A DNA stretch of 64,000 nucleotides from contig NIVC01000368.1 of assembly GCA_002269645.1 (NCBI GenBank), positions 1 through 64,000 on the forward strand, read 5' to 3'. The stretch comes from Macrostomum lignano (taxonomy: Eukaryota). The notes beneath the pieces were generated by a model, which saw nothing but the letters and a program-made list of their open reading frames with translations, ran no database searches and was not told the origin of the DNA. Shown here piece by piece: positions 1 to 19,820 of the stretch. How positions within the stretch are numbered: the first letter of the stretch is position 1; every line of letters begins with the position of its first letter. Position numbers and translations under genes: made by a program.

Positions 1-108
1 ATGCATAGCACTTCACACTCTGCAGGCATAATGCTAGGCTGGGTTTTCAAATAGCTCGTTAAGCAGGTATATTTATAGCTACTGAGGCTTCCATATGAAT
101 AGGTTTTT

Positions 109-3100
109 ATTTGCTGTCTAAATTAAACGAGTCAAATTTTCAACATTAAAACAGTACGTGCAGTGACAGAGACTAACGTCTACAAAACTATACGAGTACA
201 CCTCTTGTTTATAACTCGATTACGCTTATCATATTTATAACTCCGGTTAGCGCAGAGTTGTGCAGCTCCACAACGACACTGCCCTAATCTTTAACATTGC
301 CGCCTATCTCCCTAGGGAAAGTGCGTCAGCGTTCAACTAACCCACACTACTATCCGCTCAGTCCATTTAAACAAATTTCTCTGCACAGAGAGAGCTCAGA
401 GATTTCAGTCCGTGACAGCGGGACTTTTGCTGCTGCTGCTGAGCTGGCAGGCAAATTCGCTTGAAGAAGAGCAAAGCACTCAGTTTGAAGCCGTGTGGAA
501 CAGCTGCGGCAGACAGCAGATCGGCAGAGAAGTGCTGCTAGGAGAAGCAGTGTAGCCATGGCAACAGAGATGGAGCAGAAGCTGAGACAGGCGCTGGAGT
601 CTGGAGACAGCGAGGAGCTGCAGCGACTGTGCGGTGAGGTCGGCAGCAACATCGAGCTGAAGGTGGGCGGGTTCGACAAGCAAGAATATCCCTTTAGGCA
701 GCGTCGCCGAATGCCGCTGGCCCATCACGTGGCCTGCAAGCCGGTGAGTTCGTCGTGTCTGGAGCTGCTGATTGACAGATTCGGACCCGGCTGTCTGACA
801 TATATAAATGACAGTGATCAGACTCCAGTGCACTTGGCAGCCCAGCATCAGGACGAGTCTTGGATGAAGCTGGTTAAAGAGAAAGGAGGCAGAGGCTGTC
901 TTAGAAATGTTGATCAGTGGGGGCAGACAGTCGCTCACTTTGCCGCTATGAACAGAAAAAGCAGTTCTTGTCTAAAGTGGCTGGTGAAGGAGCTCAGCGG
1001 CGACTATCTTACAGCTCCTGATAAAGACGGTGACACGGCCGTTCATTTGGCCGCTAGGCATAAGGGCATCGAGTCGCTGGAGTGGATCAAGAGACAGATC
1101 GGAACTGACTGCTTCCGGCTGAAGGGGTGGTTGGATAGAACAGCATTACACTTTGCTGCTCAGAAGTCTGACAATTCAAACCTGAAGTGGCTGGTGAAGG
1201 AGCTCGGCAGCGACTGTCTCACAGTTCCTGATGAATACGGGAGCACGGCCATCCATTTGGCCGCTCTGTATCAAGGCATCGAGTCGCTGGAGTGGATCAA
1301 GAGACAGATCGGAACTGACTGCTTTCGGCTGAAGGGATTTTGGGATAGAACAGCATTTCACAGTGCTGCCTGGAAGTCTGAACAATTCAAATCTGAAGTG
1401 GCTGGTGAAGGAACTCGGCAGCGAGTGTCTCACAGTTCCTGACAAAGAAGGTGACACGGCCGTCCATTTGGCCGCTCAGCGGCAGCCAGTCGACTCTCTT
1501 CAGTTCATTTTTGATCAAATCGGAGCCGAAACGTTCAGCTTAAAGAACAACAAGGGCAAAACACCGGCTAATATTGTTGAAAGTGATCGTGCCGAACAGA
1601 CCAGTCAGCAAAGCGGGCCTTGATTCCCTCTACGCAGCGGCGGCTCGAAGCCTCTCGGCCTCCCGCTGGCAGTTCAGCGCCGACTGCCGCCTCAGCTGGG
1701 TGAGTCCTGACTGAGAACTGCAGCCTGACACTGAAAATACTAAAAATATTTTTGGTGAGAATTAATTGCGCTTTGATGATCGGCGCCCTGAAATTCTCAT
1801 CAGAGCCACAGTAAAGTGAGGGCGTCACGAATTTGTCAGGGCAGCTCCTCATGGCGCTTCAACCTCCTGATGGAAGATATTCGCCTCATTCGCTTCCCAC
1901 AGCGCTGCAGCTCCGCGTCCCCGCCCCCGAGCGCGCGAGCGGGTCAAGCCGTCTGGGCCGTCCGAGGGGGGACTTTCTGAGGAGACTGGGTGAGTCCACG
2001 CGGGGAGACACGGAAGGTTGGTGACACAAAGGCTGAGTGACTCCAAAGTACCAGTACTTAGGAAGCCCTAATCAACACAAAATTCATCGGATTCCTTCAC
2101 CTCAATGTTTTCAGCGCCAAGAAGCAGCTGGACCCCAGCTTCACCGACTGGGACTTCATCCTGCAGGACAGCAAGAAGCAGCTCATCGGCCGTGGTGCAT
2201 TCGGTGAGGTGTACAAGGCCCTTACAGATCGTATCCAGACGGTGGCTGTCAAGGTGCTGCCCCTGAGCGACACCGGACAATCGGGGAAGCTGCAGAAAGC
2301 CGTCGAGATGGAGAAGCGGGGAGTTGAGATTCTCAAGCGACTCTCACATCCCAACATTGTGCAGTTCCTCAAGTGCGAGCAGAAGTCGGATGGGCTGTAC
2401 ATTTTCACCGAGCTGGTCTCGGGTCACAGCCTCTTTGAGCTGATGAAGCGTCAGAACAAGCCGTTCCAGGAGTCCTGGGTCAGGGACTTCTCCAGACAGG
2501 TGCGTCTCTGGGCTCTCTGGCATTGCCTGGCATGTGTGGAATCAGGTGGGATCAGTGTGGGATCAGTTTGCGATCAGTGTGTGCGATCAGTGTAGGATCA
2601 GTGTGGGATCAGTGTGGGTGAGATCCAGAATGGATAGATGCATTCTCATGACTGCTCAAAACTGCTACACCTGCAGATCTGCTCAGGCCTGAACTTCCTG
2701 CACTGCCAGCCGGAGGGCGCTATCTTGCACCGAGACATCAAAAGCGGAAATATAATGCTCACCAACGAGGGAGTCATCAAGCTGATCGACTTCGGTCTGG
2801 CCAGGGAGATATTCACCACCTGCGGCTGAGCGCAGGCAACCCGCCAAAAGGCACCTGGCACTTCATGGCGCCCGAGCTGTTCATGGGCGAGGGTGACTCG
2901 ATTCCGTACTCAGCCAAGACCGACGTGTGGGCCTTCGGCTGCACCGTGTATGAGCTGACGGCCATGCAGCCTCCTGACGCGAACGTTCAGAAGTTCAGGA
3001 TCGCCGTTCTGAGGTGCGGAGGGCGGGCGATGCCTCGGATTGCGGATGGGTTCTCAGCCGGCCTGAAGGACTTCTACCTCAGGTGCGTAGACTATGACCC

Positions 3101-3340
3101 GAGGGAGCGAGCGGACACTGCGGAGCTGCTGCGGCACAGCTTCCTGAGTGCCTCATCGTGACTGCGAGCGATGGGCTGTGAGGGAGCGGAGCGACTTTCG
3201 GTCGGTCTGTCGGTTTTGCTTGCTGACACAGAATGTTGTCTGTTAATCATTGAGTTTGATAGTTTATTTGATTATTAGTGCTCTTTTTCTTTATCTAATT
3301 GCAATTTTTTACCCGATTGCCCTTTGCCTTTTGTTATCTA
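109..3340 (+). repeat. Segmental duplication unit A (paralog of 9602-13870)
   Basis: Homology starts at ATTTGCTGT(C/A)TAAATTAAACGAGTCAAATT (109 vs 9602) and runs through the upstream region, exons, introns and 3' flank. Confidence 0.85.
570..3161 (+). pseudogene. Ankyrin-repeat + Ser/Thr kinase (STE/MAP3K-like), copy 1; frameshifted, either a pseudogene or assembly indel errors
   Basis: Exons about 570-1699, 2115-2499 and 2677-3161 with GT-AG introns at positions matching copy 2 (phase 2, phase 0). ANK motifs TPVHLAA, TAVHLAA, TALHFAA. Kinase motifs [26 protein letters not shown]. Relative to copy 2 there is +1 nt near 1381 (stop at 1440-1442), -1 nt near 1598 and -1 nt near 2825 (stop at 2827-2829). 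Upstream in-frame starts at 495 and 558 are possible. Confidence 0.85.
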
Positions 3341-5304
3341 ATTTTTGCATCCCTGGGCTTCGAGGTCTGTAGCGAGCACAGGGTACACATTAGTATACAG
3401 TCCTTGCTTGCATGCGTCACGACACACTTACATAGTTAGCGCCTTAGCGGTAGAGGCTGACGCCCAGCCGGTGTCAACTTTTGGCCTTGCTGATTGTTTA
3501 GTTGCTTCACAAGTAATCTGGCAGTAAGGAACTGTCTTGTGCGCAGAGCGGGAAGGAGGGACAGAGAAGCGAGAAAGGCACTTCCCCAAGACCGGAGGGA
3601 GCCGCTATAGCCACTGCCTGGAGAGTGGGAAAGGCCACAAACCCTCTAACCTAGCACCCCAACACCGACCCAGCCGAAGGCCGCCCAGCCCAGCCCACCA
3701 CAGACACAATAACAACAAAGGGCAAAACTGGCCGCAGCCAATCAGCAATGCGCTAATCACAAAGCACCCATCCAGTGCCGCACAATACTAGGGGGGGACC
3801 ACTACGAGCATACTTACAAAGCCTGAGCGGCCGCCAACCGCACCCCAGCAAACAATCCCCAAGCAGCCCCAAAAAGGTAAACAGTAATAAAGAGAAGCGG
3901 TTTAAGCCAGCTGTCTGAGGCAGACACAAGGGTGGAGGCAGGGGCGCCCAGCTGCCTCTACGGGAGCTGACTCCAAGCATGGTTCATGTGATCTACCAAG
4001 TTTTTCAAGTTATGTGATTTGAAAATGATTGTAAGAGAGTTGAGAAAAATTCGGTACTGAATTCCGTCTCAACTTTTATTTTTGTTGTTTTGAAATGACA
4101 CACTTTACGATACCAAGATCACTATGTATAACATAAATTGCATGACGATGAGTGCCCTGCTCGAAGGCATGGAAATGAAAGTAAGAGAGAAAACTCGAAC
4201 AAAATAGAATGGCAATTGGTTAGGATAAAGTTAGTGTCAGATAACTTATAAAGCTGGGTAGTACAGTAGAATAAAATTTAGATCAAAATTCTAAAAAAAG
4301 CAAGCACATATTGTAAGACAGTAGATACTCAAATAGATATTGTGAAAGGGGAATTCCAAAATGGAGGCCTAGAAATACCTAAAAGTGGCACTAAGCAGAA
4401 TTTTTGTTCTGCTCCTTCTTGAATCAAGTGTGTATATAATAATGATAGATTTTGTGACGAAAAATTCATTTTTTCCTATCTCCGCATTGTATATTTTCGA
4501 AAATCGGCCTCCAAAAAGTACTCAATATTTGACTTTTACAACCTGTTGCACTACAGTGGTCCGTGCATAGTTACCAAACGTTAGGCTTGATTTTGGTCCC
4601 GGCCAAGCCCCTTTGACTTCCCAAATCGTTGGTTTGCTCCATATAGTGAAGAGCCTCTGAAGTCTGAAGACGACTGCCGATTAGCCTAACTTGAAATTCC
4701 ATCAGTTTCAGCTGCTCATATAGCTACTCGTAGGTCTGCTAATAATCATCGTGCGAATTTCAGTTTGCAGCACTGATCTTTGTATACCTCTAGCCGTCTG
4801 TTTAGCATTGTGGTTGACTTTCGTAGAGTACAGTTTCGGTCGCAGCAGAATCCATTCCTTTGTGCCAACCAGCGGGTGCATCCTCCATGCAACCTAAATA
4901 TTGAGCCTTCAGGTCATCCCACTTTAGTGGATGTTAAGCTGGGTAGTTGGACGTCTCTAGCAGATGTTGTTCGACTAGTTTAGCTGCAAGATGTAACCGT
5001 GAAAATCAAGTCTCTTAAAACTCAGAAAGAAAGAGTCTGCCTCTCCCTTCTACTAAAAACTGCTTCGAAGTAACGTAACTAGCTAAAAAAAAATCTGTCA
5101 CAACCTAATTGTACGAGCGGAACACTACTTTCGAAAACTGCAACTTTATATTTGATTATTACAAAGTCGTAAATGAGCAAACGACATATTTTTCACTGAG
5201 ATGTTATTACGAATATATTTAAAGCAGAATCTCAGCTTTCTGGGATAGAATGCAGGTGAAAATCAGTAATAAAAACAAAGGAAGAAACTTTGATTGGAGG
5301 CGTG

Positions 5305-5900
5305 GCCGCAACCCTAAGGGTCTCTTGCCTGCCGCAACCCTAAGGGTCTCTTGCTTGCCGCAACCCTAAGGGTCTCTTGCTTGCCGCAACCCTAAGGGTC
5401 TCTTGCTTGCCGCAACCCTAAGGGTCTCTTGCTTGCCGCAACCCTAAGGGTCTCTTGCTTGCCGCAACCCTAAGGGTCTCTTGCTTGCCGCAACCCTAAG
5501 GGTCTCTTGCTTGCCGCAACCCTAAGGGTCTCTTGCCTGCCGCAACCTTAAGGGTCTCTTGCTTGCCGCACCCCTAAGGGTCTCTTGCTTGCCGCAACCC
5601 TAAGGGTCTCTTGCTTGCCGCAACCCTAAGGGTCTCTTGCTTGCCGCAACCCTAAAGGTCTTTTGCTTGCCGCAACCCTAAGGGTCTCTTGCTTGCCGCA
5701 ACCCTAAGGGTCTCTTGCTTGCCGCAACCCTAAGGGTCTCTTGCTTGCCGCAACCCTAAAGGTCTTTTGCTTGCCGCAACCCTAAGGGTCTCTTGCTTGC
5801 CGCAACCCTAAGGGTCTCTTGCTTGCCGCAACCCTAAGGGTCTCTTGCTTGCCGCAACCCTAAGGGTCTCTTGCTTGCCGCAACCCTATGGGTCTCTTGC
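5305..5900. repeat. 26-bp minisatellite (GCCGCAACCCTAAGGGTCTCTTGCTT), about 23 units
   Basis: Directly visible, highly homogeneous tandem array. The unit contains the near-palindrome ACCCTAAGGGT. Confidence 0.95.
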
Positions 5901-6308
5901 TGGGCGCCGATGTCTTTTGTTAAACCCCGCTGTCTCCAGGTGTGGACCGGTATCTCGGGCCGGTTGGAGGTACATCCAAGAGTGGCAAAAGTTGAGCTCG
6001 GTCATCTCATTTATCAAGTTTTGTTGCCTCGCATTTTTTCTTGGAGTAAATATGGGGAAACTATAGGAGATTCATCATGGGAGAAATTTTATTTTTTTAT
6101 TTAGTTTTCAAAGTATGTGCCTTCACCAAGCGCCACATGGAAATCTCCTGTTAGACATGGGAGTCTCCTGTTAGATGTTTGAGAGTAAGCATTTTCCAGT
6201 TTTCAACAGTTCAGTACAGGAGAATAAAAAATTTTTTATAGCTATTACAGAGTTCCAACGATGTATCAAAGCTTTATATAGGAAAGGTAATGACCTGCGT
6301 GTGGACAT

Positions 6309-7681
6309 CTAACAGGAGACTCCCATGGCTAACAGGAGACTCCATGGCTAACAGGAGACTCCATGGCTAACAGGAGACTCCCAGGGTTAACAGGAGACTC
6401 CCATGGCTAACAGGAGACTCCCATGGCTAACAGGAGACTCCCAGGGTTAACAGGAGACTCCCATGGCTAACAGGAGACTCCCAGGGTTAACAGGAAACTC
6501 CCATGGCTAACAAAAGACTCCCATGGCTAACAGGAGACTCCCAGGGTTAACAGGAGACTCCCATGGCTAACAGGAGACTCCCAGGGTTAACAGGAGACTC
6601 CCATGGCTAACAGGAGACTCCCATGGCTAACAGGAGACTCCCAGGGTTAACAGGAGACTCCCATGGCTAACAGGAGACTCCCATGGCTAACAGGAGACTC
6701 CCATGGCTAACAGGAGACTCCCATGGCTAACAGGAGACTCCCATGGCTAACAGGAGACTCCCATGGCTAACAGGAGACTCCCAGGGTTAACAGGAGACTC
6801 CCATGGCTAACAGGAGACTCCCAGGGTTAACAGGAGACTCCCAGGGTTAACAGGAGACTCCCATGGCTAACAGGAGACTCCCAGGGTTAACAGGAGACTC
6901 CCATGGCTAACAGGAGACTCCCATGGCTAACAGGAGACTCCCATGGCTAACAGGAGACTCCCATGGCTAACAGGAGACTCCCATGGCTAACAGGAGACTC
7001 CCAGGGTTAACAGGAGACTCCCATGGCTAACAGGAGACTCCCATGGCTAACAGGAGACTCCCATGGCTAACAGGAGACTCCCAGGGTTAACAGGAGACTC
7101 CCATGGCTAACAGGAGACTCCCATGGCTAACAGGAGACTCCCATGGCTAACAGGAGACTCCCAGGGTTAACAGGAGACTCCCATGGCTAACAGGAGACTC
7201 CCATGGCTAACAGGAGACTCCCAGGGTTAACAGGAGACTCCCATGGCTAACAGGAGACTCCCATGGCTAACAGGAGACTCCCATGGCTAACAGGAGACTC
7301 CCAGGGTTAACAGGAGACTCCCATGGCTAACAGGAGACTCCCATGGCTAACAGGAGACTCCCATGGCTAACAGGAGACTCCCATGGCTAACAGGAGACTC
7401 CCATGGCTAACAGGAGACTCCCATGGCTAACAGGAGACTCCCATGGCTAACAGGAGACTCCCAGGGTTAACAGGAGACTCCCATGGCTAACAGGAGACTC
7501 CCATGGCTAACAGGAGACTCCCATGGCTAACAGGAGACTCCCATGGCTAACAGGAGACTCCCAGGGTTAACAGGAGACTCCCATGGCTAACAGGAGACTC
7601 CCATGGCTAACAGGAGACTCCCACGGCTAACAGGAGACTCCCACGGCTAACAGGAGACTCCCACGGCTAACAGGAGACTCC
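6309..7681. repeat. 20-bp minisatellite (CTAACAGGAGACTCCCATGG, variant TTAACAGGAGACTCCCAGGG), about 68 units
   Basis: Tandem array of two interspersed variants. Two inverted units lie upstream at 6136-6178. Confidence 0.95.
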
Positions 7682-7722
7682 TATTGCTGCACAACTGAGC
7701 GTGGTTGCAGCGGTAGGTATGA

Positions 7723-8135
7723 GCAAGTCAGGATACAATGGGTCACGTCACGGCAGGTCAGGACACAACGGGTCACGGCAAGTCAGGACACAACGGGTCA
7801 CGGCAAGTCAGGACACAGCGGTCACGGCAAGTCAGGACACAGCGGGTCACGGCAAGTCAGGACACAGCAGGTCACGGCAAGTCAGGACACAGCGGGTCAC
7901 GGCAAGTCAGGACACAGCGGGTCACGGCAAGTCAGGACACAGCGGGTCACGGCAAGTCAGGACACACCGGTCACGGCAAGTCAGGACACAGTGGGTCACG
8001 GCAAGCTAAACGGTGTCTGTATATTTAACTGAGAACTCTTGAGTAAGCACTGGGCTTCCTGCTCCAACAGTTGCTAGTAAAAGTTCAGTCCAAAAATCAT
8101 GCAAACACAAAAATCAGTTGCTCGGAAAAAGCGCC
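7723..8135 (+). repeat. Left arm of a long inverted repeat: 25-bp array (GGGTCACGGCAAGTCAGGACACAGC, about 11 units) plus about 130 bp of unique sequence
   Basis: Reverse complement of 15361-15681, including the unique part (AACTGAGAACTCTTGAGTAAGCACTGGG...GAAAAAGCGCC). Confidence 0.9.
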
Positions 8136-9180
8136 TCTGACGAGGGCGATGGCTCTGGTGGTGTCGGTCGCGCAAAGGTACATAACTTGGTAGCCTGGTC
8201 CGTCCAAACGACCTGTTGCGCCCTTCGGCGACTCCAGCAGGCAGGCCACATCATCCGCGCCGAGTCGTACTGACCAGAGCCGGTGCAGGCCGGTGCTGCT
8301 GCTAACGCTATACAGGCCACCCTATCGGCCGGGGCAGGCGCGCACTCGGCGCCTGCTGGTTGACGCCGGCGCCCCGGATTCGACCGGCGGCGTGGCGTTC
8401 ATTCGCGACCTGGCCTTGAAGAGCGCCCTGCGTATTCTGTTGTTGTTGTTGGTAGCCTGGAAGCATGCAGGTCGGCTTTTCCATGCGGGTATACGGTTAA
8501 TGAATAAGGTAGATGTCAACATCCTTGTTGTCGAAAGTGCCTGTAAGGTTGCCAGATGCTGCGAGAGCTTGGAACAGGTTGATATGAATAATGTGCAGGT
8601 TTACTGGTTGGTTCGCCGGAGGCGGATTGCCAATGATTTGGTTGCTGGTCGCAGTGTCATATTTCGGCTGGCCAGCAGGGTTCGCCCTCAGAGCCCCGCT
8701 CCTAGTTTGACACAGCGTTGCGAACGGCATTACTCGTTCCCAGAGCTATCCGAGCTCGCGGACTCGCCTCTGCGTCGATCGCCAACCGGGCGACGCCTGG
8801 GCAGCAGGTGGAAGACGATCTTCCACGCCCCGACGTAGGCTTCCAAATCGCTCTTTCCGAGGACGTTTTCCCACTCAGCCGAGAAACCCATGTACGGGGT
8901 CTTACCGGGGAGCCCGGCGCGAATCTCCTCGATGCACCTCGAGCCGGAGTAGAAGGCTCGGTAGCGCCTACAGGGCGGCGTGGTCGGGCACGCTCAACGA
9001 CCATGGGTGGGAGAGCGGTCGCGCAGGTGTCCCAGGAGATGGACACAAGCTTTGCCAGCGCGAGCTCAAGCTGGGCCTCGTCCTTGAAGGCGAGGATGAC
9101 GCTGCCGCGGAATTTTCGTCTCTCGAGCCGTATCGAATGGTCTAGAAATCCATGCAGAGTAGGCTGGAATGGAGAAAACT
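8136..9180 (-). other. Degenerate GC-rich coding-like segment of unidentified origin
   Basis: Short minus-strand frames look protein-like ([22 protein letters not shown]; [51 protein letters not shown]; LHRLWSVRLGADDVACLLE) but are broken by stops and frameshifts. Confidence 0.3.
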
Positions 9181-9987
9181 GAATTGTAGAAAAATGGGGT
9201 AGGTAACCGCGCGGGGACTGGATATACCCCAGCCAGCTCCGAGGAGCTACCCTCTGTCACAGTAAACAACAGAGAAGCTTTGGATTCCAGGCGAGGCCCC
9301 GGCAGGCCCCAGGTCAACACTGCAAGATCAGGGGGCGGGAGGCCGGCTGTAGGTTTGGGACCAGACGCCAGGTCAGAGTGACAGCTGACGCCCAAGCCCT
9401 CCTCCACAGAAGTGGCCCTTGAGAACAGTCAGCAGCCAACTACTCAGCAGCCACCTGCCCAGCAAAAAGGCAGCAGGGGGGATCTGTTCTCCCACAGCCA
9501 GGCCTGAGCGAAAGAGGATGGAGAAACCTCCTCGGAAACGAAAAGCTGGCAGATGTCACTGAGTCCCTCGGTTTAAGTTGCCATTTCCCCCCCCATCCCC
9601 CATTTGCTGTATAAATTAAACGAGTCAAATTTCCAACATTACAACAAAACTCGGAATGCCACAGCCTAATGTTTACAGCGCTATGCGACTCTCAGGTAAA
9701 ACTCCTGCTTATCTTATTCAGAACTCCGCTTATCGCACAGTGGTGCTGCTGCACACCGACACTGCCCTATCGTTTAAGACTGCCGTGCCGCCTATTTTCG
9801 AAATGCAAGTGCGTCAGAGTTGAACCAAGACATGCTACTTTTAAGGACAGATCACTTTTGCTGCTGCTGCTGAGCTGGCAGGCAAATTTGCTTGAAGAAG
9901 AGCAAAGCACTCAATTTGAAGCCGTGTGGAACAGCTGCGGCAGACAGCAGATCCGCAGAGAAGCGCTGCTAGGAAAGAGAAACCGGC

Positions 9988-12667
9988 ATGGGGAACACTC
10001 GAAGTGTAGCCAAGGCAACAGAGATGGAGCGGAAGCTGAGAGCGGCGCTGGAGGCTGGAGACAGCGAGGAGCTGCAGCGACTGTGCGGTGAGGTCGGCAG
10101 CAACATCGAGCTGAAGGTGGGCGGCTTCGGAATGCAAAACCTTTTCTTTAGAAAGCTTCTTAAAATGCCGTTGGCCCATCACGTGGCCTGCAAGCCGGTG
10201 AGTTCGTCCTGCCTGGAGCTGCTGATTGACAGATTCGGACCCGGCTGTCTGACACATATAAATGACAGTGATCAGACTCCAGTGCACTTGGCAGCCCAGC
10301 ATCAGGACGAGTCTTGGATGAAGCTGGTTAAAGAGAAGGGAGGCAGAGGCTGTCTGAGAATTGTTGATAAGTGGGGGCAGACAGTCGCTCACTTTGCCGC
10401 TATGAACAGAAAAAGCAGTTCTTGTCTAAAGTGGCTGGTGAAGGAACTCGGCAGCGACTGTCTCACAGCTCCTGATAAAGACGGTGACACGGCCGTTCAT
10501 TTGGCCGCTAGGCATCAGGGCATCGAGTCGCTGGAGTGGATCAAGAGACAGATCGGAACTGACTGCTTTCGGCTGAAGACAAAGTGTGATAGAACAGCAT
10601 TTCACTTTGCTGCTCAGAAGTCCGACAGCTCAAATCTGAAGTGGCTGGTGAAGGAGCTCGGCAGCGACTGTCTCACAGTTCCTGACAAAGAAGGTGACAC
10701 AGCCGTCCATTTGGCCGCTCTGTATCAAGGCATCGAGTCGCTGGAGTGGATCAAGAGACAGATCGGAACTGACTGCTTTCGGCTGAAGACAAAGTGTGAT
10801 AGAACAGCATTTCACTTTGCTGCTCAGAAGTCCGACAGCTCAAATCTGAAGTGGCTGGTGAATGAGCTCGGCAGCGACTGTCTCACAGTTCCTGACAGAG
10901 ACGGTGACACGGCCGTCCATTTGGCCGCTAAGCATCAGCCAGTCGATTCTCTTCAGTTCATTTTTGACCAAATCGGAGCCGAAATGTTCAGTTTGAAGAG
11001 CAACAGGGGCATAACACCGGCTGATGTTGTTGAGAGATTTTGGTTACTCAATGACCAGTCAGCAAAGCAGGCCTGGATTTCCTCCACACAGCGGCTGCTC
11101 GAAGCCTCTCAGCCTCACGCTGGGTGAGTCCTGGCAGAGAGATGCTGCATGACTGACGCTAAAATGCTGAAAATATTTTTGGCGAAAATTCATTGCGCTT
11201 TGATGATCGGCGCCCTGAAATTCTCAGCAGCGCAGCAGTCAAGCAAGGGCGTCACGAATTTCTTGGGGCAGCTCCTCATGGCACCCCCAAACTTCCTATG
11301 GCATCCCCAATCTCTTCATGGCACCCCTAAACCATGCCCTGGCGCCCCAATTTCAAGGTGTTTTTGGAAGGTAAAAATATGACAGTACAGATGTCGGCAT
11401 TTAAGGTGCGACTCAGTGAGTCCGCGCTTAAATATGGGGCCAGTGTAGGTGAAGCAGAGGGTTGTGCCGCGGAATGCTGAGTGACTCCAAAGTACTCCGA
11501 AAGCCTCAAACAACTCAAAATTTATTGAATTCCTTTACCTAATATTCCCAGCGCCAAGAAGCAGCTGGACCCCAGCTTTACCGACTGGGACTTCATTCTG
11601 CAGGACGAAAAGAAGCAGCTCATCGGCCTTGGTGGATTCGGTGAGGTGTTCAAGGCCCTCACAGACCGCAACCAGACGGTGGCTGTCAAGGTGCTGCCCA
11701 TGAGCCAAGCTGAGCAAGACGCAGAGGAACTGAAGATAAAAATTCTGATGGAGAAGCGGGGAGTTGAGATCCTCAAGCGACTCTCGCATCCCAACATTGT
11801 GCAGTTCCTCAAGTGCGAGCAGAAGTCGGATGGGCTGTACATCTTCACCGAGCTGGTCTCGGGTCACAGCCTCTTTGAGCTGATGCAGCGTCAGAACAAG
11901 CCGTTCAAGGAGTCCGGGGTCAGGGACTTCTCCAGACAGGTGCGTCTCTGGGCTCTCTGGCATTGCCTGGCATGGGTGGGGTGAGTGTGGGATGAGTGTG
12001 GGATGAGTGTGGGATGAGTGTGGGATGAGTTTGGGATGAGTGTGGGATGAGTGTTGAATCAATGTGGGATCAGTGTGGGATCAGTGTGGGATCAGTGTGG
12101 GATCAGTGTGGGATCAGTGTGGGTGGGATCTGGAATGGCTAGATCCAACTTGATGACTGCTTAAAACTGCTCCACCTGCAGATCTGCTTAGGCCTGAACT
12201 TCCTGCACTGCCAGCCGCAGGGCGCCATCCTGCACCGTGACATCAAGAGCTCTAATGTGATGCTCACCAACAAGGGTGTCATCAAGCTGATCGACTTCGG
12301 TCTCGCCAAGGAGATCGTCGGCACCAGCGACCTGAGCGACGGCGTCGATCCCAAAGGCACCTGGCACTTCCTGGCGCCCGAGCTGTTCATGGGCGATGGC
12401 GAATCGATTCCGTACTCAGCCAAGACCGACGTGTGGGCCTTCGGCTGCACCGTGTATGAGCTGACGGCCATGCAGCCTCCTGACGCGAACGTTCAGCAGT
12501 TCCGGATCGCCGTGCTGAGGTGCGAAGGGCGAGCGATGCCTCAGATTGCTGACGGGTTCTCAGCCGGCCTGAAGGACTTCTACCTCAGGTGCGTAGACTA
12601 TGACCCGAGGGAGCGAGCGGACACCGCGGAGCTGCTGGGGCACAGCTTCCTGAGAGTCTCATCGTGA
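9988..12667 (+). CDS. Ankyrin-repeat + Ser/Thr kinase (STE/MAP3K-like), copy 2, intact, about 669 aa
   Basis: Exons 9988-11123, 11552-11939 and 12182-12667 total 2010 nt and are in frame across GT-AG junctions (GG|C, CAG|ATC). About 8 ANK repeats, including 210-nt two-repeat units. Kinase motifs GLGGFGEV, VAVK, alphaC E (VEIL), HRDIKSSN, DFG, GTWHFLAPE, DVWAFG. The ATG shared with copy 1 is at 10024. Confidence 0.9.
11983..12125. repeat. 11-bp repeat (GGGAT[C/G]AGTGT) in kinase intron 2 of copy 2; shorter version at about 2547-2618 in copy 1
   Basis: Visible tandem units. The intron is 242 nt in copy 2 versus 177 nt in copy 1. Confidence 0.85.
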
Positions 12668-12744
12668 CTGCGAGAGCGACGGGCTGTGAGGGAGCTGAGC
12701 GACTCCTGAAGCGGGCGGCTTTGCTTGCTGATGTTGTCTGCTTT

Positions 12745-13870
12745 TGTTTATCTGATTGCCGTTTTTGTTTATCCGATTGCCCATTTTGTTTATTCGATTG
12801 CCCTTTTGTTTATCCGATTGCCCTTTTGTTTATCCGATTGCCCATTTTGTTTATCCGATTGCCGTTTTTGTTTATCTGATTGCCCATTTCGTTTATCCGA
12901 ATGCCGTTTTTGTTTATCCGATTGCCCTTTTGTTTATCTGATTGCCCATTTCGTTTATCCGATTGCCGTTTTTGTTTATCCGATTGCCCTTTTGTTTATC
13001 CGATTGCCCATTTTGTTTATCCGATAGCCGTTTGTGTTTATCTGATTGCCCATTTCGTTTATCCGATTGCCGTTTTTGTTTATCCGATTGCCCTTTTGTT
13101 TATCCGATTGCCCATTTTGTTTATCCGATAGCCGTTTGTGTTTATCTGATTGCCCATTTTGTTTATCCGATTGCCGTTTTTTATCCTATTGTCATTTTTG
13201 TTTATTCGATTGCCGTTTTTGTTTATTCGATTGCCGTTTTTGTTTATTCGATTGCCGTTTTTTATCCGATTGCCGTTTTTGTTTATCCGATTGCCGTTTG
13301 TTTATCCGATTGCCGTTTTTTATCCGCGATTGCTGTTTTTGTTTATCCGATTGCCGTTTCTGTTTATTCGATTGCCGTTTTTTATCCGATTGCCGTTTGT
13401 GTTTATCTGATTGCCCATTTCGTTTATCCGATTGCCGTTTTTTATCCGATTGCAGTTTTTGTATATTCGATTGCCGTTTTTGTTTATTCGATTGCCGTTT
13501 TTGTTTATTCGATTGCCGTTTTTTATCCGATTGCCGTTTTTGTTTATCCGATTGCCGTTTGTTTATCCGATTGCCGTTTTTTATCCGCGATTGCTGTTTT
13601 TGTTTATCCGATTGCCGTTTCTGTTTATTCGATTGCCGTTTTTTATCCGATTGCCGTTTGTGTTTATCTGATTGCCCATTTCGTTTATCCGATTGCCGTT
13701 TTTTATCCGATTGCAGTTTTTGTATATTCGATTGCCGTTTTTGTTTATTCGATTGCCGTTTTTGTTTATCCGATTGCCATTTTTGTTTATCCGATCGCCG
13801 TTTTTGTTTATTTGATTGTCGTTTTTGTTTATTCGATTGTCGTTTTTTATCCGATTGCCGTTTTTGTTAT
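12745..13870. repeat. 20-21-bp minisatellite (TTTTGTTTATCCGATTGCCG-like) with a 261-bp higher-order duplication
   Basis: Tandem array directly 3' of the copy 2 stop codon. Blocks 13150-13410 and 13411-13671 are near-identical. Confidence 0.9.
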
Positions 13871-14329
13871 CCCAGTGTCATTTTTTTTATATAACTGTTT
13901 TGTTTTTTGAACTGCTCAGATTTGAATTTATTATCCATTTCTCTATCAATTTTCCTGCTGCTATCAGATGTTCGAATCAATTATCCAATCATAGTTTTGT
14001 TTATTCAGCTGCGACCCGCAACTTAAATTTTGACTTCCGGGTTTGTTTTACTGGTTGCTCCTTTCACAATGAGACATTTTTGTGCTGACTTGAGTGCTAT
14101 TTCAGTTTTAAGCTGATCAAGGTTGATTTTGAAACTCTGGCACAAAGACAATCCCAATTCTCTAATCTACTCAGACTGCTCAATGCCTACTCCAGTGTAG
14201 TGTGAGCGTCTTGTGTTAATTTTTGAGTTCTATTAGCTAGTTGATTGTATTGTTGTCGATAATTAATTTGCTTATTTTAGTCACGCGTTTTTTCAATGTA
14301 CTTTTTGTTAGTTAGAGTTTATTTTTAGT

Positions 14330-15360: not shown

Positions 15361-15681
15361 GGCGCTTTTCCGGCACTGATTTTTGTATTTGATTTTTGGA
15401 CTAACTTTTTATTAGCAACTGTTGGAGCAGGAAACCCAGTGCTTACTCAAGAGTTTTCAGTTAAATAATAGAGACACCGTTTGGCTTGCCGTGACCCGCT
15501 GTGTCCTGACTTGCCGTGACCCGCTGTGTCCTGACTTGCCGTGACCCGCTGTGTCCTGACTTGCCGTGACCCGCTGTGTCCTGACTTGCCGTGACCCGCT
15601 GTGTCCTGACTTGCCGTGACCCACTGTGTCCTGACTAGCCGTGACCCGCTGTGTCCTGACTTGCCGTGACCCGCTGTGTCC
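15361..15681 (-). repeat. Right arm of the long inverted repeat: unique segment plus about 8 units of the 25-bp array
   Basis: GGCGCTTTTCCGG...CCCAGTGCTTACTCAAGAGTTTTCAGTT...CCGTTTGGCTTGCCGTGACCCGCTGTGTCCTGAC is the inverse of 7723-8135. Confidence 0.9.
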
Positions 15682-16769: not shown

Positions 16770-19319
16770 ACCGCAGGCAGCTCCGGCTCCGTACCCTGCC
16801 TCCGCCGCGACCGAGCACTGCAGATGCACCGTCTGCTTTCGCTGCGGCAAAGCGGCAAAGCTTTCCGCCGTGGTGCTTGCCACCTTCACTGCTCCGTCCC
16901 GGGATGCGATTCGGCGTGCCACTGCTCCTGCTCCGGGGCCTCGCGTTACGCCCGGAATCCTTCCTGGACCTGTTCGCTCCATCCTGACCGCGATGCTCCT
17001 CCCAACTCCAGCATCACCACCTTGGCCGGCCGCCACCCCTGGCTGATCCGGCCGATCCGGCTACGCCCGCTAACCGCCCCGCTCAGCCTTGCATCATCTC
17101 GCTTCTGACCGGGACCGTCCCGGCTCACTGGCGCCGCGCCACCATCATCCCGCTGCTCAAGCACGGTAAGCCGGCCTGCCGCGTCGACAGCTTCCGCCCA
17201 GTTAGCCTCACATCCTGTGTGGTCAAACTCCTTGAGCGGATCATCTTCATCCGGCTTTACGATCTCGCTGAGAGTCACGGCTGGATCCATCACTGCCAAG
17301 CTGGCTTCCGCCGCCTCCGCTCCTGTAAGGACCTCGTCCTCGAGCTTGTCCAAGCCATCAGCGACGGCTTCCAGCTTCGTCCACACCTTCGGACACTCGT
17401 CGCCCTGCTCGACTACAGTAGAGCGTTCGACTGGACTTCCAGGCCCCGGCCCCGCTGGTGAGATGGTGTTTCGCCTTCCTATGCGACTGCTCCGCCCGCG
17501 TCAACGTCAATGGCGCCTTGAGCCACCCTCTGCCTCTCCGCCAAGGCCTGCCCCAAGGTTCGGTGATCGCCCCGTTCCTTTTTCGGCTCTTCATCGATGG
17601 CGTCGCTCGCACCATGCCTCCCGCGATCACCCCCTCACTCTACGCCGACGACCTCACCATCCGCGCGTAGCACTCATCGGTCGCTTCCGCCACGGAGTCC
17701 CTCCAGGCTGGACTCGACGCTGCTGCTGAGTGGAGTGCGCGCATGAAGATGACGCTAAATCCGTCCAAGAGCGTGGTGTCGCTCTTCTCCAACTTGACCG
17801 CGGAGGCGTCACTTCAACCACAGCTGCTTCTCAACGGCTCGTCTCTGCCCTTTGACGCCAACCCGCGCTTTCTCGGCGTCGTCCTGGACCGCACCCTCAG
17901 CTTTGGCCCTCACGTCAGGGACCTCGTTTCGAAGGCCCGCAGCCGCTGTCGCGTGCTCGCCGCGCTTGCCAACCAGGACTGGGGCTGGCGCAAAGATAAA
18001 CTCCGCTTGGTCTTCAACGCGCTGATCCGCTCAGTGCTGGACTATGCTGCCCCCGCCTGGCAGCCCTGGCTGAGCGAGTCCCGCTAATTGATGACCTCGA
18101 TCGCTGTCAAAACCGGGCGCTCCGCATCATCACGGGCCAACTCCAATCGTCCCCGGTGGACGCCATCAGACTGGAGGCCGACGTTCCCAGCTACAGAACC
18201 CACAGCCTGCGCCTGCTCGCCCGCTCCTGGGAGAAGGCCCTTCGCCTCCCGCCGAATCACCCTCGACGACGTGCCGCGGATGGTACGGTACAGCACCGCC
18301 TGGTCAGATCCAGCTGGCGCCAGGCCGCTTCTCGCCTCTTGGAGCGTCTTCCGTTGACCATGGCCCCCCGCCTTCCGCTCTACCCTGCCGATGCCGTGAT
18401 TCCTCCTCCACCGCCTGATCGCACCCGCGTGTTCGACCACTCCCTCGGTCCAGCGTTGGTGCTCTCCGACTCGGACTTCCGCGCCCGCGCCTTGGACCGG
18501 GTCCGTGACCACCTGCACAGCCCTCCAGGCACCTCCCTGGTCATCTACTCTGACGGCCTCGCCCAGAAAGGGGTCTCGGCCGGCGGCCACGCCTTCGTTG
18601 TCACCCAAAGCGACCCGGCCCACCCATCCGTCTTGCACTCGGCTTCCTTCCGCGGCGCCCCTGCTACCTCCTCGTTCGATGAGGAAGTCGCCGCCTTCGC
18701 CTGGGCTGCCGATTCTGTTTCTATTCGCCGTTTCGTCTTCTGCACCGACAGTCAAAGCCTGGTGGTGGCCCTGTCTAACTCCAACCGCTCGATGGGCCGC
18801 GCCCTGACCTCGCTCGCCCGCATCGCCCGGGTTCAGTGGATCCCGGGGCACTGCGGAATTCCCGGGAACGAGCTCGCCGACCACCTGGCCAAGGAGGGGA
18901 GTCGCCTGCCGACCCCTCGTCTCCTATTTCCTTCCGCGCGGCCGCGGCTGCCTGTCAGCGCCATATCGTTGACCATCCTAGCCACCCGCGCACGTCCGCC
19001 GCCTACGAACTCGTTAGTCATGCTCAGGACCGCGCCGCCGTCACCTGCCGGGCCGACCAGCGCCTGCTCGCCCAACTCCGGGCTGGCCACTGCCGGTCGC
19101 TCCGCGCTTACCACGCCTTACTTGACGCGTCGGCGGACTCCTCCTGCCCCTTCTGCAACCTGGAACCTGAAACCGTGGAGCACTGGCTCTGTGCGTGCCC
19201 GGCCCTGTGTGGTCGTCGCACCCACCAGTTCGGCACCCCGTGCCCCCCCCCCCCTTGCGGTCCTCAGCTCCGACCCTCGTCGATCGCGGTGCGCATGTCT
19301 GAAGAAGAAGAAGAAGAAG
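16770..19319 (+). mobile_element. Decayed non-LTR retrotransposon (I-group-like: RT + RNase H + C-terminal CCHC) with an N-terminal PHD-like finger; endonuclease missing
   Basis: RT motifs WRRATIIPLLK, FRPVSLTSCVVKLLERII, QAGFR, LDYSRAFD, GLPQGSVIAP, YADD (17641-17652), FLGVVLDRTLSF. RNase H motifs YSDG (about 18546), E, CTDSQS, WIPGHCGIPGNELAD. CPFCx8Hx4C at 19145-19198. (GAA)n tail at 19300-19319. In-frame stop at 17668-17670 and several frameshifts. Confidence 0.88.
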
Positions 19320-19422
19320 CAACAGCAGTGAAGTTGCAGCCGCTTCCGGAGCAGCAGGACCCGCCGCCGCCGCCGCCGCCGCCACTGAAGCCGCCACCGG
19401 CACCCGCAGCACCGTAGAAGGG

Positions 19423-19820
<398 letters not shown>

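What the first reader, a model, noticed from the sequence alone, without database searches (positions are those of the whole stretch)
570..12667. Tandem ankyrin-kinase paralogs with hypervariable blocks at the ankyrin hairpin tips, a possible diversifying sensor-kinase family
Seen: the two copies are nearly identical over long stretches, yet differ in sharp blocks. The 9 nt at the ANK hairpin position encode GWL and GFW in copy 1 versus TKC and TKC in copy 2, with identical flanks (AAG...GATAGA). Other blocks are FDKQEYPFRQRRR vs FGMQNLFFRKLLK, the beta3-alphaC linker and the activation loop. Within copy 2 the 210-nt two-ANK units are homogenised. Known: ANK hairpin tips form the ligand-binding surface, and K/E/HRD/DFG/APE indicate an active kinase. 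Inference: a fast-evolving recognition module fused directly to a MAP3K-like kinase, as in immune or allorecognition receptors.
Basis: partly seen in the sequence, partly recalled or inferred. Interest (0 to 1): 0.7.

Follow-up and report, generated by a model that had tools for sequence, protein, structure and literature searches.

The report
Flatworm ankyrin-kinase genes with hypervariable binding face
Two neighbouring genes of the flatworm Macrostomum lignano belong to a large species-restricted family in which nearly identical ankyrin repeats vary mainly at the residues that normally touch a ligand and are fused to an ASK1-like protein kinase; this is the evolutionary pattern of a diversifying recognition receptor, but its function is untested.

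Summary
The window is the start of Macrostomum lignano contig NIVC01000368.1. It carries two tandem ANK-kinase genes: copy 1 at 558-3161 and copy 2 at 9988-12667. They are 87-90% identical, and their differences cluster in sharp blocks (P<2e-4).

Copy 2 is an intact 669-aa protein, already annotated as hypothetical. In this assembly copy 1 has three 1-nt frameshifts. A 99.7%-identical intact copy lies on a sister contig, so these may be consensus errors.

Across 10 paralogous genes I extracted 39 di-ankyrin units of 70 aa, 2 to 13 per gene. Their frameworks differ by 3-5% per nucleotide; the ligand-face codons differ by 43%. At positions chosen beforehand (those randomised in designed ankyrin libraries), pN/pS is 3.0 (bootstrap CI 1.8-6.2). 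Elsewhere it is 0.59.

The variable blocks in the kinase also have raised dS, so they look like gene-conversion mosaics, not selection.

The kinase keeps all catalytic residues and is closest to ASK1/MAP3K5 and STE20 kinases. Close relatives were found only in M. lignano.

Best reading: concerted evolution plus diversifying selection on a cytosolic recognition module wired to a kinase. This resembles fungal NLR repeats, but without a NOD domain. A sensor or immune role is inference only.

The parts
558..3161 (+). Copy 1 of the ANK-kinase gene. Exons 558-1699, about 1904-1990 (87-nt mini-exon), 2115-2499 and 2677-3161. Out of frame in this assembly.
   Evidence: Landmarks and translations. The intact allele P0007 on sister contig L001 was mapped exon by exon. 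NCBI calls only a 294-aa product at 558-1442.
1381..1381 (+). Extra A, a +1 frameshift in copy 1. Two further 1-nt deletions follow 1588 and 2826.
   Evidence: Base-by-base comparison with the sister contig: 7-8 substitutions and three 1-nt indels in 2.6 kb. Flanking non-coding DNA has 10 one-base indels in 2.1 kb, so assembly error is plausible.
1020..1440 (+). Copy 1: two internal 210-nt di-ankyrin units. Tip codons at 1125-1133 (GWL) and 1335-1343 (GFW).
   Evidence: TRF period-210 array 975-1477 at 87% matches. Unit extraction. Tip coordinates.
9988..12667 (+). Copy 2 of the ANK-kinase gene, intact. Exons 9988-11123 (N-cap plus about 9 ANK repeats plus linker), 11552-11939 (kinase N-lobe) and 12182-12667 (kinase C-lobe). 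Product 669 aa.
   Evidence: The spliced translation is open and identical to P0001 / BOX15_Mlig032061g1. Pfam gives Pkinase at 399-665 (E 2.7e-55) plus Ank families. The AF2 model has pLDDT 90.7.
10474..10893 (+). Copy 2: two internal 210-nt di-ankyrin units. Tip codons at 10579-10587 and 10789-10797 (TKC twice). A-type variable codons of unit 1 at 10477-10482, 10486-10488 and 10510-10512.
   Evidence: TRF array 10425-10938 at 93% matches. The units differ at 9 of 210 nt. Coordinates.
10126..10164 (+). N-terminal variable block of copy 2 (FGMQNLFFRKLLK). The copy 1 counterpart is 672-710 (FDKQEYPFRQRRR). It is the hairpin before the first ANK helix.
   Evidence: Alignment. Family-wide excess of non-synonymous change at these columns. 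The model shows strands 41-44 and 58-61 with lower pLDDT. This block is unique to P0001 in the family.
11700..11747 (+). beta3-alphaC linker block of copy 2 (MSQAEQDAEELKIKIL). The copy 1 counterpart is 2263-2307.
   Evidence: Against copy 1, dS is 0.77 and dN 0.58, against kinase background dS 0.137. The motif occurs in no other family member.
12293..12382 (+). Activation segment of copy 2, DFG to APE. The copy 1 counterpart is 2788-2876. It includes the 4-nt cluster 12362-12365.
   Evidence: dS is 0.30 here against 0.137 background. GTSDLS is shared with P0009 and KGTWHF with the copy 1 type. TGGC (WH) in the window stands against CTCT (LY) in the otherwise about 99.7%-identical sister copy.
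9976..10000 (+). Copy 2-specific insertion that creates a new start codon (ATG at 9988, MGNTRS...). The family's usual ATG reads AAG at 10012-10014.
   Evidence: Alignment of the 5' regions of 10 paralogs.
9854..9987 (+). Conserved 5' leader or promoter-proximal region. The copy 1 counterpart is 423-557.
   Evidence: 4.8% divergence between the copies, against 9-10% in exons and 12-22% in introns. The last 70 nt are nearly invariant in 10 paralogs.

Best explanation
These are two adjacent members of a multigene family, found only in Macrostomum lignano, that encodes cytosolic ankyrin-repeat/protein-kinase fusions.

Shown. Each protein has an N-terminal ankyrin solenoid whose core is a tandem array of near-identical 70-aa (210-nt) di-ankyrin modules. 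The array holds 2 modules in the window genes and up to 13 elsewhere. A short linker joins it to a C-terminal kinase domain that keeps all catalytic residues and is most like ASK1/MAP3K5 and STE20-group kinases. The module frameworks are kept almost identical within and between genes. The codons at ANK positions 2, 3, 5 and 13 (plus 1, 4 and 10 in the second repeat of the unit) are highly diverse and accumulate about three times more non-synonymous than synonymous change. These are the beta-hairpin tip and the end of the inner helix, which together form the canonical concave ligand-binding face.

Inferred mechanism of evolution. Unequal crossing-over and gene conversion among repeats and among tandem or dispersed paralogs homogenise the scaffold, change module number, and move short blocks between genes. 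Diversifying selection retains and reshuffles variants on the binding face.

Inferred mode of action. The variable ANK face binds a changing set of protein ligands. Binding then either recruits a substrate to the kinase or controls the kinase itself, for instance through relief of autoinhibition or through clustering. Recognition would thus be turned into phosphorylation signalling, in the manner of an intracellular non-self or stress sensor.
For: Organism, gene models and annotation status.

Domain content: Pfam Pkinase E 2.7e-55 plus Ank families. The AF2 model has pLDDT 90.7, with the solenoid (residues 60-350) at 95-98.

Kinase class: the best PDB sequence hits are MST3/MST4/STK25, SLK and ASK1 at E about 1e-34. 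The best fold hits are ASK1 with target TM 0.86-0.90. K425, H526/D528, N533, D546-F547-G548, E575 and R653 are invariant or nearly so in a 36-sequence alignment. All 9 paralog kinases are open and carry the motifs.

Repeat architecture: 39 units from 10 genes, 2-13 per gene, with all exon-1 ORFs open apart from a single in-frame stop codon in L008b and the broken copies excluded from the set.

Framework versus tips: framework nucleotide divergence is 2.7% within genes and 5.0% between genes. There are 27 and 30 distinct tip combinations among the 39 units. In the 43 unit pairs with 3 or fewer framework differences out of 186 nt, the eight pre-chosen codons differ at 38% of nucleotides.

Selection: at the DARPin positions (2, 3, 5, 13, 14 of each ANK), Nd/Sd is 176/10 and pN/pS 2.98, with binomial P=5e-5 against neutrality. 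In the other columns pN/pS is 0.59. Fisher P=1.6e-13. These 10 of 70 columns hold 55% of all non-synonymous changes. The bootstrap CI is 1.83-6.15, and the result survives removal of the 13-unit gene and use of the alternative published position set (positions from PMC4308713).

Replicates: in the non-repeated flanking ANKs, the pre-chosen positions give pN/pS 1.59 against 0.65 elsewhere, Fisher P=2e-5. A second subfamily, P0016, shows the same pattern at the protein level.

Gene conversion and mosaicism: differences are clustered. The kinase blocks have raised dS. Block states are shared with other paralogs. A 4-nt cluster separates otherwise near-identical sister copies.

Restriction to M. 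lignano: every named hit down to E about 1e-70 in two database searches is from this species.
Against: No functional, expression or ligand data exist, so the sensor step is analogy.

Gene-wide and pairwise dN/dS is below 1.

The site test is a counting method (Nei-Gojobori on minimum-spanning-tree edges), not a likelihood model. It ignores recombination among units, and multiple hits at the tip codons make the N/S split approximate.

In the flanking ANKs, pN/pS above 1 is not significant (P=0.066).

M. lignano has a recently duplicated genome and a long-read assembly with many 1-nt indels. Some 'paralogs' are therefore homeologs or haplotypes, and the copy count is inflated.

One window copy is frameshifted, and the sister contig's copy 2 has a 16-nt deletion. 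If these are real, they argue for gene turnover or relaxed constraint on individual members.

pTM is 0.60, so the ANK-kinase orientation is not defined and no autoinhibitory contact can be claimed.
Confidence: 0.6

Rival explanations
1. Neutral mosaic. The sharp blocks and hypervariable tips reflect only gene conversion and recombination among diverged paralogs, together with relaxed constraint at surface loops. The scaffold is homogenised, and there is no diversifying selection and no recognition function.
For: Pairwise dN/dS is below 1 in every segment. The kinase blocks have dS raised together with dN. Block states are shared between paralogs in a mosaic fashion. A microconversion-like 4-nt cluster separates the sister copies. 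Differences are strongly clustered. Some copies appear broken.
Against: At binding-face positions chosen beforehand, N:S is 176:10 and pN/pS 2.98 (CI 1.83-6.15), significantly above neutrality. pS at those same codons (0.061) is close to the framework value (0.046), so the excess is specifically non-synonymous. Relaxed constraint alone gives omega near 1, not 3. All examined exon-1 arrays, including a 3.4-kb one, stay open, except for one in-frame stop in L008b.
Confidence: 0.15
2. The evolutionary regime is the same, but the role is endogenous. The variable ANK face diversifies substrate or partner choice for a house-keeping or reproductive function, for example sexual conflict or germline processes in this hermaphrodite, or control of the genome's abundant repeats and transposons. 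It does not sense non-self.
For: Nothing in the data ties the family to immunity. The proteins have no signal peptide-like or death-fold/NOD domains (Pfam). ANK domains commonly act as substrate adaptors (established knowledge). The M. lignano genome around these genes is saturated with repeats and retroelement remnants.
Against: There is no direct evidence either way. The combination seen here (high internal repeat conservation, repeat-number variation, positive selection on the binding face) has so far been described mainly for non-self recognition receptors (Dyrka et al. 2014, PMC4986451).
Confidence: 0.2
3. Artefact or decaying locus. The tandem pair is a pseudogene cluster or an assembly duplication, and the pattern has no biological meaning.
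For: Window copy 1 has three frameshifts, and the sister contig's copy 2 has a 16-nt deletion. The assembly shows many 1-nt indels. Annotated models of three paralogs skip whole units.
Against: Copy 2 here and copy 1 on the sister contig are intact. Eight further loci on separate contig regions have open reading frames with all catalytic motifs, and one more (L008b) carries a single in-frame stop. Tip sequences are identical between the two sister contigs, so they are not sequencing noise. Framework pN/pS of 0.59 and kinase pN/pS of 0.33-0.61 indicate purifying selection.
Confidence: 0.04

Closest known systems
Hypervariable ANK/TPR/WD repeat domains of fungal NOD-like (STAND) receptors, such as the Podospora HET-E/NWD family and Pa_3_8560 (Dyrka et al. 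2014, PMC4986451)
   Same: [quoted passage not shown] Repeat number varies. Repeats evolve in concert within and between paralogs. Positive selection acts on a handful of positions per repeat, which map to the concave face (inner helix and beta-hairpin) of the ANK domain (compared).
   Different: There is no NACHT/NB-ARC nucleotide-binding domain and no HET/HeLo-type effector (Pfam). The repeats are N-terminal and fused directly to an active-looking kinase. The repeating unit is a pair of non-identical ANK repeats (70 aa). The host is an animal.
Designed ankyrin repeat libraries: DARPins (Binz et al. 2003, from memory) and ANK-N5C (PMC4308713)
   Same: A constant consensus scaffold carries diversity confined to positions 2, 3, 5, 13 (plus 10, 14 or 33) in beta-turn 1 and helix 1. 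These are the positions that vary naturally here. The ANK region aligns to NI3C and other DARPins.
   Different: This is natural, genomically encoded diversity spread over paralogs and repeats, not a synthetic library. The framework sequence is unrelated to the DARPin consensus beyond the ANK motif.
ASK1/MAP3K5 and the STE20-group kinases MST3/MST4/STK25, SLK/STK10 and TAO3
   Same: These are the best sequence and fold matches to the kinase domain (E about 1e-34, 28-30% identity, target TM 0.86-0.90). The catalytic loop is of the HRDIKxxN Ser/Thr type.
   Different: Identity is only about 30%. ASK-type TRX-binding/TPR/PH regions and the coiled coil are absent, as are the GCK regulatory tails. 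An N-terminal ANK array is not a feature of these families. No kinome-level classification was run.
RNase L
   Same: It has the same domain order: an N-terminal ANK sensor domain followed by a kinase-fold domain. Foldseek aligns about 690 columns. In RNase L the ANK face binds the activating ligand 2-5A (established knowledge).
   Different: Global TM is only 0.26. RNase L has a pseudokinase and a C-terminal KEN ribonuclease, whereas this protein ends with the kinase domain and keeps its catalytic residues. There is no evidence for a nucleotide ligand.
Other animal ANK-plus-kinase proteins: RIPK4/ANKK1, ILK, TNNI3K, DAPK1
   Same: They combine ANK repeats with a kinase domain. RIPK4 proteins appear as weak hits (25-31% identity).
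   Different: RIPK4/ANKK1 and DAPK1 have the kinase first and the ANK repeats after it. By established knowledge (not tested here), ILK and TNNI3K kinases belong to the TKL group; what was tested here is only that the best hits to this kinase are STE-group. All of these are conserved low-copy genes without homogenised or hypervariable repeats.

Membership tests
Eukaryotic protein kinase superfamily (Pfam PF00069) | Kinase domain profile match above the curated threshold | tested here: met
   188 bits against a cut-off of 31.7, E 2.7e-55, residues 399-665.
Eukaryotic protein kinase superfamily (catalytically competent) | Gly-rich loop, beta3 Lys, HRD Asp, catalytic Asn, DFG, APE | tested here: met
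   G404/G406/G409, K425, H526-D528, N533, D546-F547-G548, E575 and R653 are conserved in a 36-sequence alignment and in all 9 paralogs. Enzymatic activity itself was not tested.
STE group / MAP3K (ASK-like) | Kinase domain closest to STE11/STE20 members | tested here: inconclusive
   The best PDB sequence hits are MST3/4, STK25, SLK and ASK1. The best fold hits are ASK1. Identity is only about 30%, however, and no kinome HMM or phylogeny was run.
ASK1/MAP3K5 orthologue | N-terminal TRX-binding/TPR/PH regulatory region and C-terminal coiled-coil/SAM | tested here: not met
   The N-terminus is an ANK solenoid, and the protein ends 4 residues after the kinase profile.
Ankyrin repeat proteins (Pfam Ank clan) | Repeated 33-aa helix-loop-helix-hairpin motif (GxTPLHxAA...) | tested here: met
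   Ank_2, Ank_4, Ank_5, Ank and Ank_3 are all above threshold. The region aligns to Espin, NOMPC, ankyrin and DARPins. The model shows paired helices at pLDDT 95-98.
NOD-like receptors / STAND (including fungal NLRs) | Central NACHT or NB-ARC NTPase domain | tested here: not met
   No such Pfam match at E<=0.01. The whole sequence is accounted for by ANK, linker and kinase.
Fungal-NLR-type hypervariable repeat regime (a way of evolving, not a family) | High internal repeat conservation (>85% identity over >=100 aa) | tested here: met
   Unit frameworks are 95-97% identical at the nucleotide level. Whole units within copy 2 are 95.7% identical.
Fungal-NLR-type hypervariable repeat regime | Repeat-number variation among genes or alleles | tested here: met
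   2, 2, 3, 5, 2, 4, 13, 2, 3 and 3 units in 10 genes. Allelic polymorphism was not testable.
Fungal-NLR-type hypervariable repeat regime | Positive selection on positions that map to the binding surface | tested here: met
   pN/pS is 2.98 (CI 1.83-6.15) at pre-chosen positions and 0.59 elsewhere. This is a counting method, so a likelihood test is still needed.
RNase L | C-terminal KEN ribonuclease domain and pseudokinase | tested here: not met
   There is no sequence after the kinase domain, and the catalytic residues are intact.
RIPK4/ANKK1 | N-terminal RIP-type kinase followed by C-terminal ANK repeats | tested here: not met
   The domain order is reversed. RIPK4 proteins are only 25-31% identical hits, covering about a third to two-fifths of the query.
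N-myristoylated proteins (copy 2 only) | N-terminal M-G-x-x-x-S/T | not tested
   MGNTRS fits the consensus by eye. No predictor or experiment was used.

The most novel reading that the evidence does not exclude
An animal class of NOD-less intracellular immune receptors: a germline-encoded 'natural DARPin library' of homogenised ankyrin modules, whose hypervariable concave face binds pathogen-, symbiont- or transposon-derived proteins. Binding would directly switch on a fused ASK1-like MAP3K and so start stress or cell-death signalling without an adaptor. New specificities would arise by unequal crossing-over and microconversion among dozens of paralogs.
Probability: 0.2. Interest if true: 0.85.

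Novelty: new variant of a known kind. Interest (0 to 1): 0.62.

Why it matters
Highly conserved repeats that carry hypervariable ligand-contact residues are a hallmark of receptors that must keep up with changing targets. Examples are fungal NLRs, lamprey VLRs and plant NLR LRRs. Flatworm innate recognition is poorly understood.

If this family is a recognition system, three things follow. It would be a compact receptor design, with the binding scaffold fused straight to a MAP3K-like kinase and no NOD domain. It would be a natural counterpart of engineered DARPins, built on a different scaffold. And it would be testable in a flatworm where RNAi and transgenesis are available.

Even if the function is endogenous, the locus is a clear case of concerted evolution combined with site-specific diversification in an animal. 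It also shows that current gene models collapse these repeats: a 13-unit gene is annotated with 5.

Tried and rejected
1. Pseudogene cluster. Rejected as the general explanation: copy 2 here, copy 1 on the sister contig and eight other loci are open with conserved catalytic motifs, with one further locus (L008b) showing a single in-frame stop. The status of window copy 1 itself stays open.

2. RIPK4/ANKK1, ILK, TNNI3K or DAPK membership. Rejected on domain order and on kinase class as indicated by the best hits.

3. NLR/STAND membership. Rejected: there is no NOD domain.

4. Bacterial or viral origin. Many bacterial Ser/Thr kinases appear as weak hits, but the genes have GT-AG introns, the closest kinases are eukaryotic STE-group members, and all close relatives are from the flatworm.

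5. Positive selection on the kinase blocks. Rejected because dS is raised as well.

6. Exact spliced mapping of annotated proteins P0004, P0005 and P0011 failed. The cause was gene models that skip whole repeat units in frame, so I used the genomic ORFs instead.

7. Literature searches returned nothing on this family. I searched by gene identifiers, by 'Macrostomum lignano' + ankyrin + kinase, and by kinome.

8. A donor-cassette model (silent ANK pseudogene arrays next to the genes). tblastn finds no further ANK or kinase fragments in the 64-kb window.

Full report
**What the sequence is.** ORFs in the region are split and joined by GT-AG introns, so the DNA is eukaryotic. A three-exon model for the downstream copy (9988-11123, 11552-11939, 12182-12667) gives an open 669-aa protein. 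[quoted passage not shown] A look-up of that protein shows that the window is the first 64 kb of contig NIVC01000368.1 of assembly GCA_002269645.1. The gene is therefore already annotated, but only as hypothetical. No paper in the held library mentions it or its family.

**Checking the observation.** The two copies align over about 2.7 kb, introns included, at 87-90% identity.
- GGGTGGTTG and GGATTTTGG in copy 1 (GWL, GFW) against ACAAAGTGT twice in copy 2 (TKC, TKC), between identical CTGAAG and GATAGA flanks.
- The N-terminal block FDKQEYPFRQRRR against FGMQNLFFRKLLK.
- The beta3-alphaC linker.
- The activation segment.

The clustering of differences is statistically real. In exon 1 the variance/mean ratio of the spacing between mismatches is 31, against 10 for random placement. 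None of 5000 randomisations reached the observed value. Adjacent mismatch pairs number 38 against 20 expected. TRF finds the 210-nt period in both genes, at 87% matches in copy 1 and 93% in copy 2. The two copy 2 units differ at 9 of 210 nt, against 26 in copy 1.

- Window copy 1 is out of frame three times, and NCBI annotates only a 294-aa stump.
- A second contig, NIVC01003511.1 (L001), is collinear with window 1-13222 at 97-99% identity and holds the same tandem pair. It also has part of a third copy upstream.
- On that contig copy 1 is intact (P0007, 699 aa, four exons including an 87-nt mini-exon), while copy 2 has a 16-nt deletion.
- Window copy 1 differs from the intact copy by only 7-8 substitutions plus the three 1-nt indels.
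- One-base indels are even more frequent in the adjacent non-coding DNA between the two contigs (10 in 2.1 kb). The frameshifts may therefore be long-read consensus errors, and I leave the status of copy 1 open.

For all evolutionary comparisons I used the intact sister copy of copy 1.

**The family.** A word-indexed search and an exhaustive HMMER search of 1.84 billion representatives both give the same picture. A dense series of M. lignano proteins runs from 80% down to about 33% identity. After that come only generic kinase or ANK hits: bacterial Ser/Thr kinases, RIPK4, and an oomycete protein. I fetched seven more loci, giving ten analysable genes. Tandem arrangement recurs, in L008 and on the sister contig.

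The genomic exon-1 reading frames are open, with one in-frame stop in L008b. They contain 2, 2, 3, 5, 2, 4, 13, 2, 3 and 3 internal units of 70 aa. Three annotated proteins skip whole units in frame, so current gene models under-represent the arrays.

**Anatomy of the protein.** Pfam finds a protein-kinase domain at 399-665 and ankyrin repeats. An AlphaFold2 model built on a 36-sequence alignment has mean pLDDT 90.7. Its features are:
- a continuous helical solenoid from about residue 60 to 350, at pLDDT 95-98;
- a lower-confidence beta-hairpin at 41-61, which is the N-terminal variable block;
- a disordered activation loop;
- pTM 0.60, meaning that the domain orientation is undefined.

The kinase keeps the glycine loop, K425, HRD, N533, DFG, APE and R653. 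By sequence it is closest to the STE20-group kinases MST3/MST4/STK25 and SLK, and to ASK1. By fold it is closest to ASK1/MAP3K5, with target TM 0.86-0.90. 'MAP3K-like' is thus reasonable, though at about 30% identity it is not an orthologue of any named kinase. RNase L is the only solved protein that aligns along the whole length, which reflects the shared ANK-then-kinase-fold order.

**The central result.** Aligning the 39 units shows an almost invariant framework (DxxGxTAVHLAAxHQGIESLEWIKRQIGTDCFRLK xxx DRTAFHFAAxKSDNSNLKWLVKELGSDCLTVP) with variation confined to a few columns.

The register against canonical ankyrin repeats is unambiguous, both from the T-x-x-H-x-A-A motif and from alignments to Espin, NOMPC and DARPins. 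The variable columns are ANK positions 2, 3, 5 and 13 of the first repeat, and 1-5, 10 and 13 of the second.

To avoid circularity I fixed the test set in advance. It comprised the positions randomised in designed ankyrin libraries: 2, 3, 5, 13, 14 (DARPins, from memory) or 2, 3, 5, 10, 13 (ANK-N5C, PMC4308713). These lie in beta-turn 1 and helix 1 and form the binding surface.

I counted Nei-Gojobori synonymous and non-synonymous differences along the 38 edges of a minimum spanning tree:
- The ten pre-chosen columns carry 176 non-synonymous and 10 synonymous changes. pN/pS is 2.98, with binomial P=5e-5 against neutrality.
- The other sixty columns carry 144 and 74, giving pN/pS 0.59.
- Fisher P is 1.6e-13.
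- 55% of all non-synonymous change falls in 10 of 70 columns, a share that no random set of ten columns reaches.
- The bootstrap interval is 1.83-6.15.
- Removing edges internal to the 13-unit gene gives 3.24, and the alternative position set gives 3.12.
- pS at the tip codons (0.061) is close to that of the framework (0.046), so the excess is specifically non-synonymous.

In the non-repeated flanking ankyrins of nine paralogs, the same positions show pN/pS 1.59 against 0.65 elsewhere. The enrichment has P=2e-5, but 1.59 is not significantly above 1. A second subfamily, P0016, has its own homogenised 70/71-aa units that vary at the same kind of positions.

**How the pattern is produced.** Framework divergence between units is 2.7% within genes and 5.0% between genes. 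This is lower than intron divergence between the two window copies (12-22%) and lower than their exon divergence (9-10%).

Among the 43 unit pairs that differ at 3 or fewer of 186 framework nucleotides, the eight core tip codons differ at 38% of nucleotides. One pair has 1 framework difference against 14 of 24 tip nucleotides. Uniform point mutation cannot produce that. It needs continual homogenisation of the scaffold by unequal crossing-over or gene conversion, which also explains the 2-13 range in unit number and the duplicated sub-arrays in L007. Tip variants must meanwhile be retained and reassorted.

Tip combinations do reassort. The same first-repeat tips pair with different second-repeat tips, and vice versa, giving 27 and 30 distinct combinations in 39 units.

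There are also direct traces of short-tract exchange:
- The activation loop of copy 2 is P0009-like in its first half and copy 1-like at KGTWHF.
- The sister contig's copy 2 differs there by a 4-nt cluster (TGGC to CTCT, WH to LY) in an otherwise about 99.7%-identical gene.

**The kinase blocks.** Between copy 1 and copy 2, dN/dS is below 1 in every segment: N-terminus 0.75, units 0.64, C-terminal ANK plus linker 0.79, kinase 0.49. In the beta3-alphaC block, dS is 0.77 and dN 0.58. In the activation segment, dS is 0.30. The rest of the kinase has dS 0.137 and omega 0.33.

Raised synonymous divergence means these blocks have a different, older ancestry than their flanks. That is mosaic structure from gene conversion, or escape from it, not positive selection. 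The beta3-alphaC and N-terminal blocks of copy 2 are unique in the family, so a donor was not found.

**Interpretation and limits.** Shown:
- the architecture;
- conservation of the catalytic residues;
- restriction of close relatives to M. lignano, and the expansion of the family;
- the scaffold/tip contrast;
- the site-specific excess of non-synonymous change on the canonical binding face;
- signs of conversion.

Inferred:
- that the ANK face binds diverse ligands;
- that binding is coupled to kinase signalling;
- that the ligands are non-self.

The closest evolutionary analogue is the hypervariable ANK/TPR/WD repeats of fungal NLRs. These combine high internal repeat conservation, repeat-number polymorphism, concerted evolution and positive selection on the concave face (Dyrka et al. 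2014). This family lacks the defining NOD domain, so it works like them but is not one of them. An endogenous role (substrate targeting, reproduction, repeat control) fits the data equally well at the functional level.

Caveats:
- The selection test is a counting method without a recombination-aware likelihood model.
- The genome is recently duplicated, and the assembly is indel-prone.
- No expression or biochemical data were available.

**Verdict.** I rate it a new variant of a known kind, of moderate to high interest.

Noticed in passing
window 9976-10014: Copy 2 has a 23-25-nt insertion that supplies a new ATG (9988). It gives an N-terminus MGNTRS that fits the N-myristoylation consensus. 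The start codon used by all other paralogs reads AAG at 10012-10014. This may mark a copy 2-specific change of localisation.
   Followed up: partly
window 423-557 and 9854-9987; L001, L003-L009 upstream of position 10001: The roughly 70-130 nt upstream of the start codon are 96-100% identical in ten paralogs. That is better conserved than the coding sequence or the introns. It could be a shared 5' UTR or promoter, or a conversion hotspot.
   Followed up: partly
window 12362-12365 versus L001 21726-21729: A 4-nt cluster (TGGC versus CTCT, WH versus LY in the P+1 loop) separates two otherwise near-identical sister copies of copy 2. Each state matches a different paralog, which looks like a micro gene conversion.
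   Followed up: partly
window 1381, 1588/1589, 2826; L001 near 19881: The damage is reciprocal: copy 1 is frameshifted on this contig, and copy 2 carries a 16-nt deletion on the sister contig. One-base indels are also very common in non-coding DNA between the two contigs, so at least the 1-nt changes may be assembly errors.
   Followed up: yes
L007 10001-13428 (NIVC01000558.1): One paralog has an uninterrupted 3.4-kb first exon with 13 di-ankyrin units (about 30 ANK repeats). Its annotated protein has only 5. Proteins P0004, P0005 and P0011 all skip whole units in frame, so gene models collapse the repeats.
   Followed up: yes
window about 1904-1990: An 87-nt mini-exon (AAAPRPRPRAR...) is used in copy 1-type genes and in several paralogs. 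It is degenerate in the first intron of copy 2.
   Followed up: partly
proteins P0014, P0016, P0035/P0034: P0014 joins the same ANK array to a clearly different kinase domain, which suggests domain shuffling. P0016 is a second subfamily with its own homogenised units. P0035 has ordinary diverse ANK repeats with the same kinase type, and it has an 80%-identical relative in a Logan assembly of unknown origin; it may be the conserved ancestral-type member.
   Followed up: partly
L001 2-877: The sister contig carries kinase exons of a third tandem copy upstream. The window begins at a contig end, so the array here may also be longer.
   Followed up: partly
window 5305-5901, 6309-7681, 7747-8005 (inverted copy 15485-15681), 12742-13890, 22515-23726, 28222-30339, 46654-48364 and others: The window is extremely dense in minisatellites with periods of 16-31 nt and tens of copies each. 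They include the whole spacer between the two genes and the 3' flank of copy 2.
   Followed up: no
window 18156-19331, 19423-19706: An ORF with an RNase H-like motif (…DSQSL…WIPGHCGIPGNELAD…) ends in an A-rich stretch followed by (CTA)x95. It is probably a remnant of a non-LTR retroelement.
   Followed up: no
window 27596-28192; L005 1-7532: A bestrophin-like ORF lies downstream of the pair. A paralogous ANK-kinase locus (L005) also has a bestrophin gene as neighbour, which suggests that a larger segment was duplicated.
   Followed up: no
window about 34000-62000: G+C falls from about 52% in the first half of the window to about 35% in the second half.
   Followed up: no
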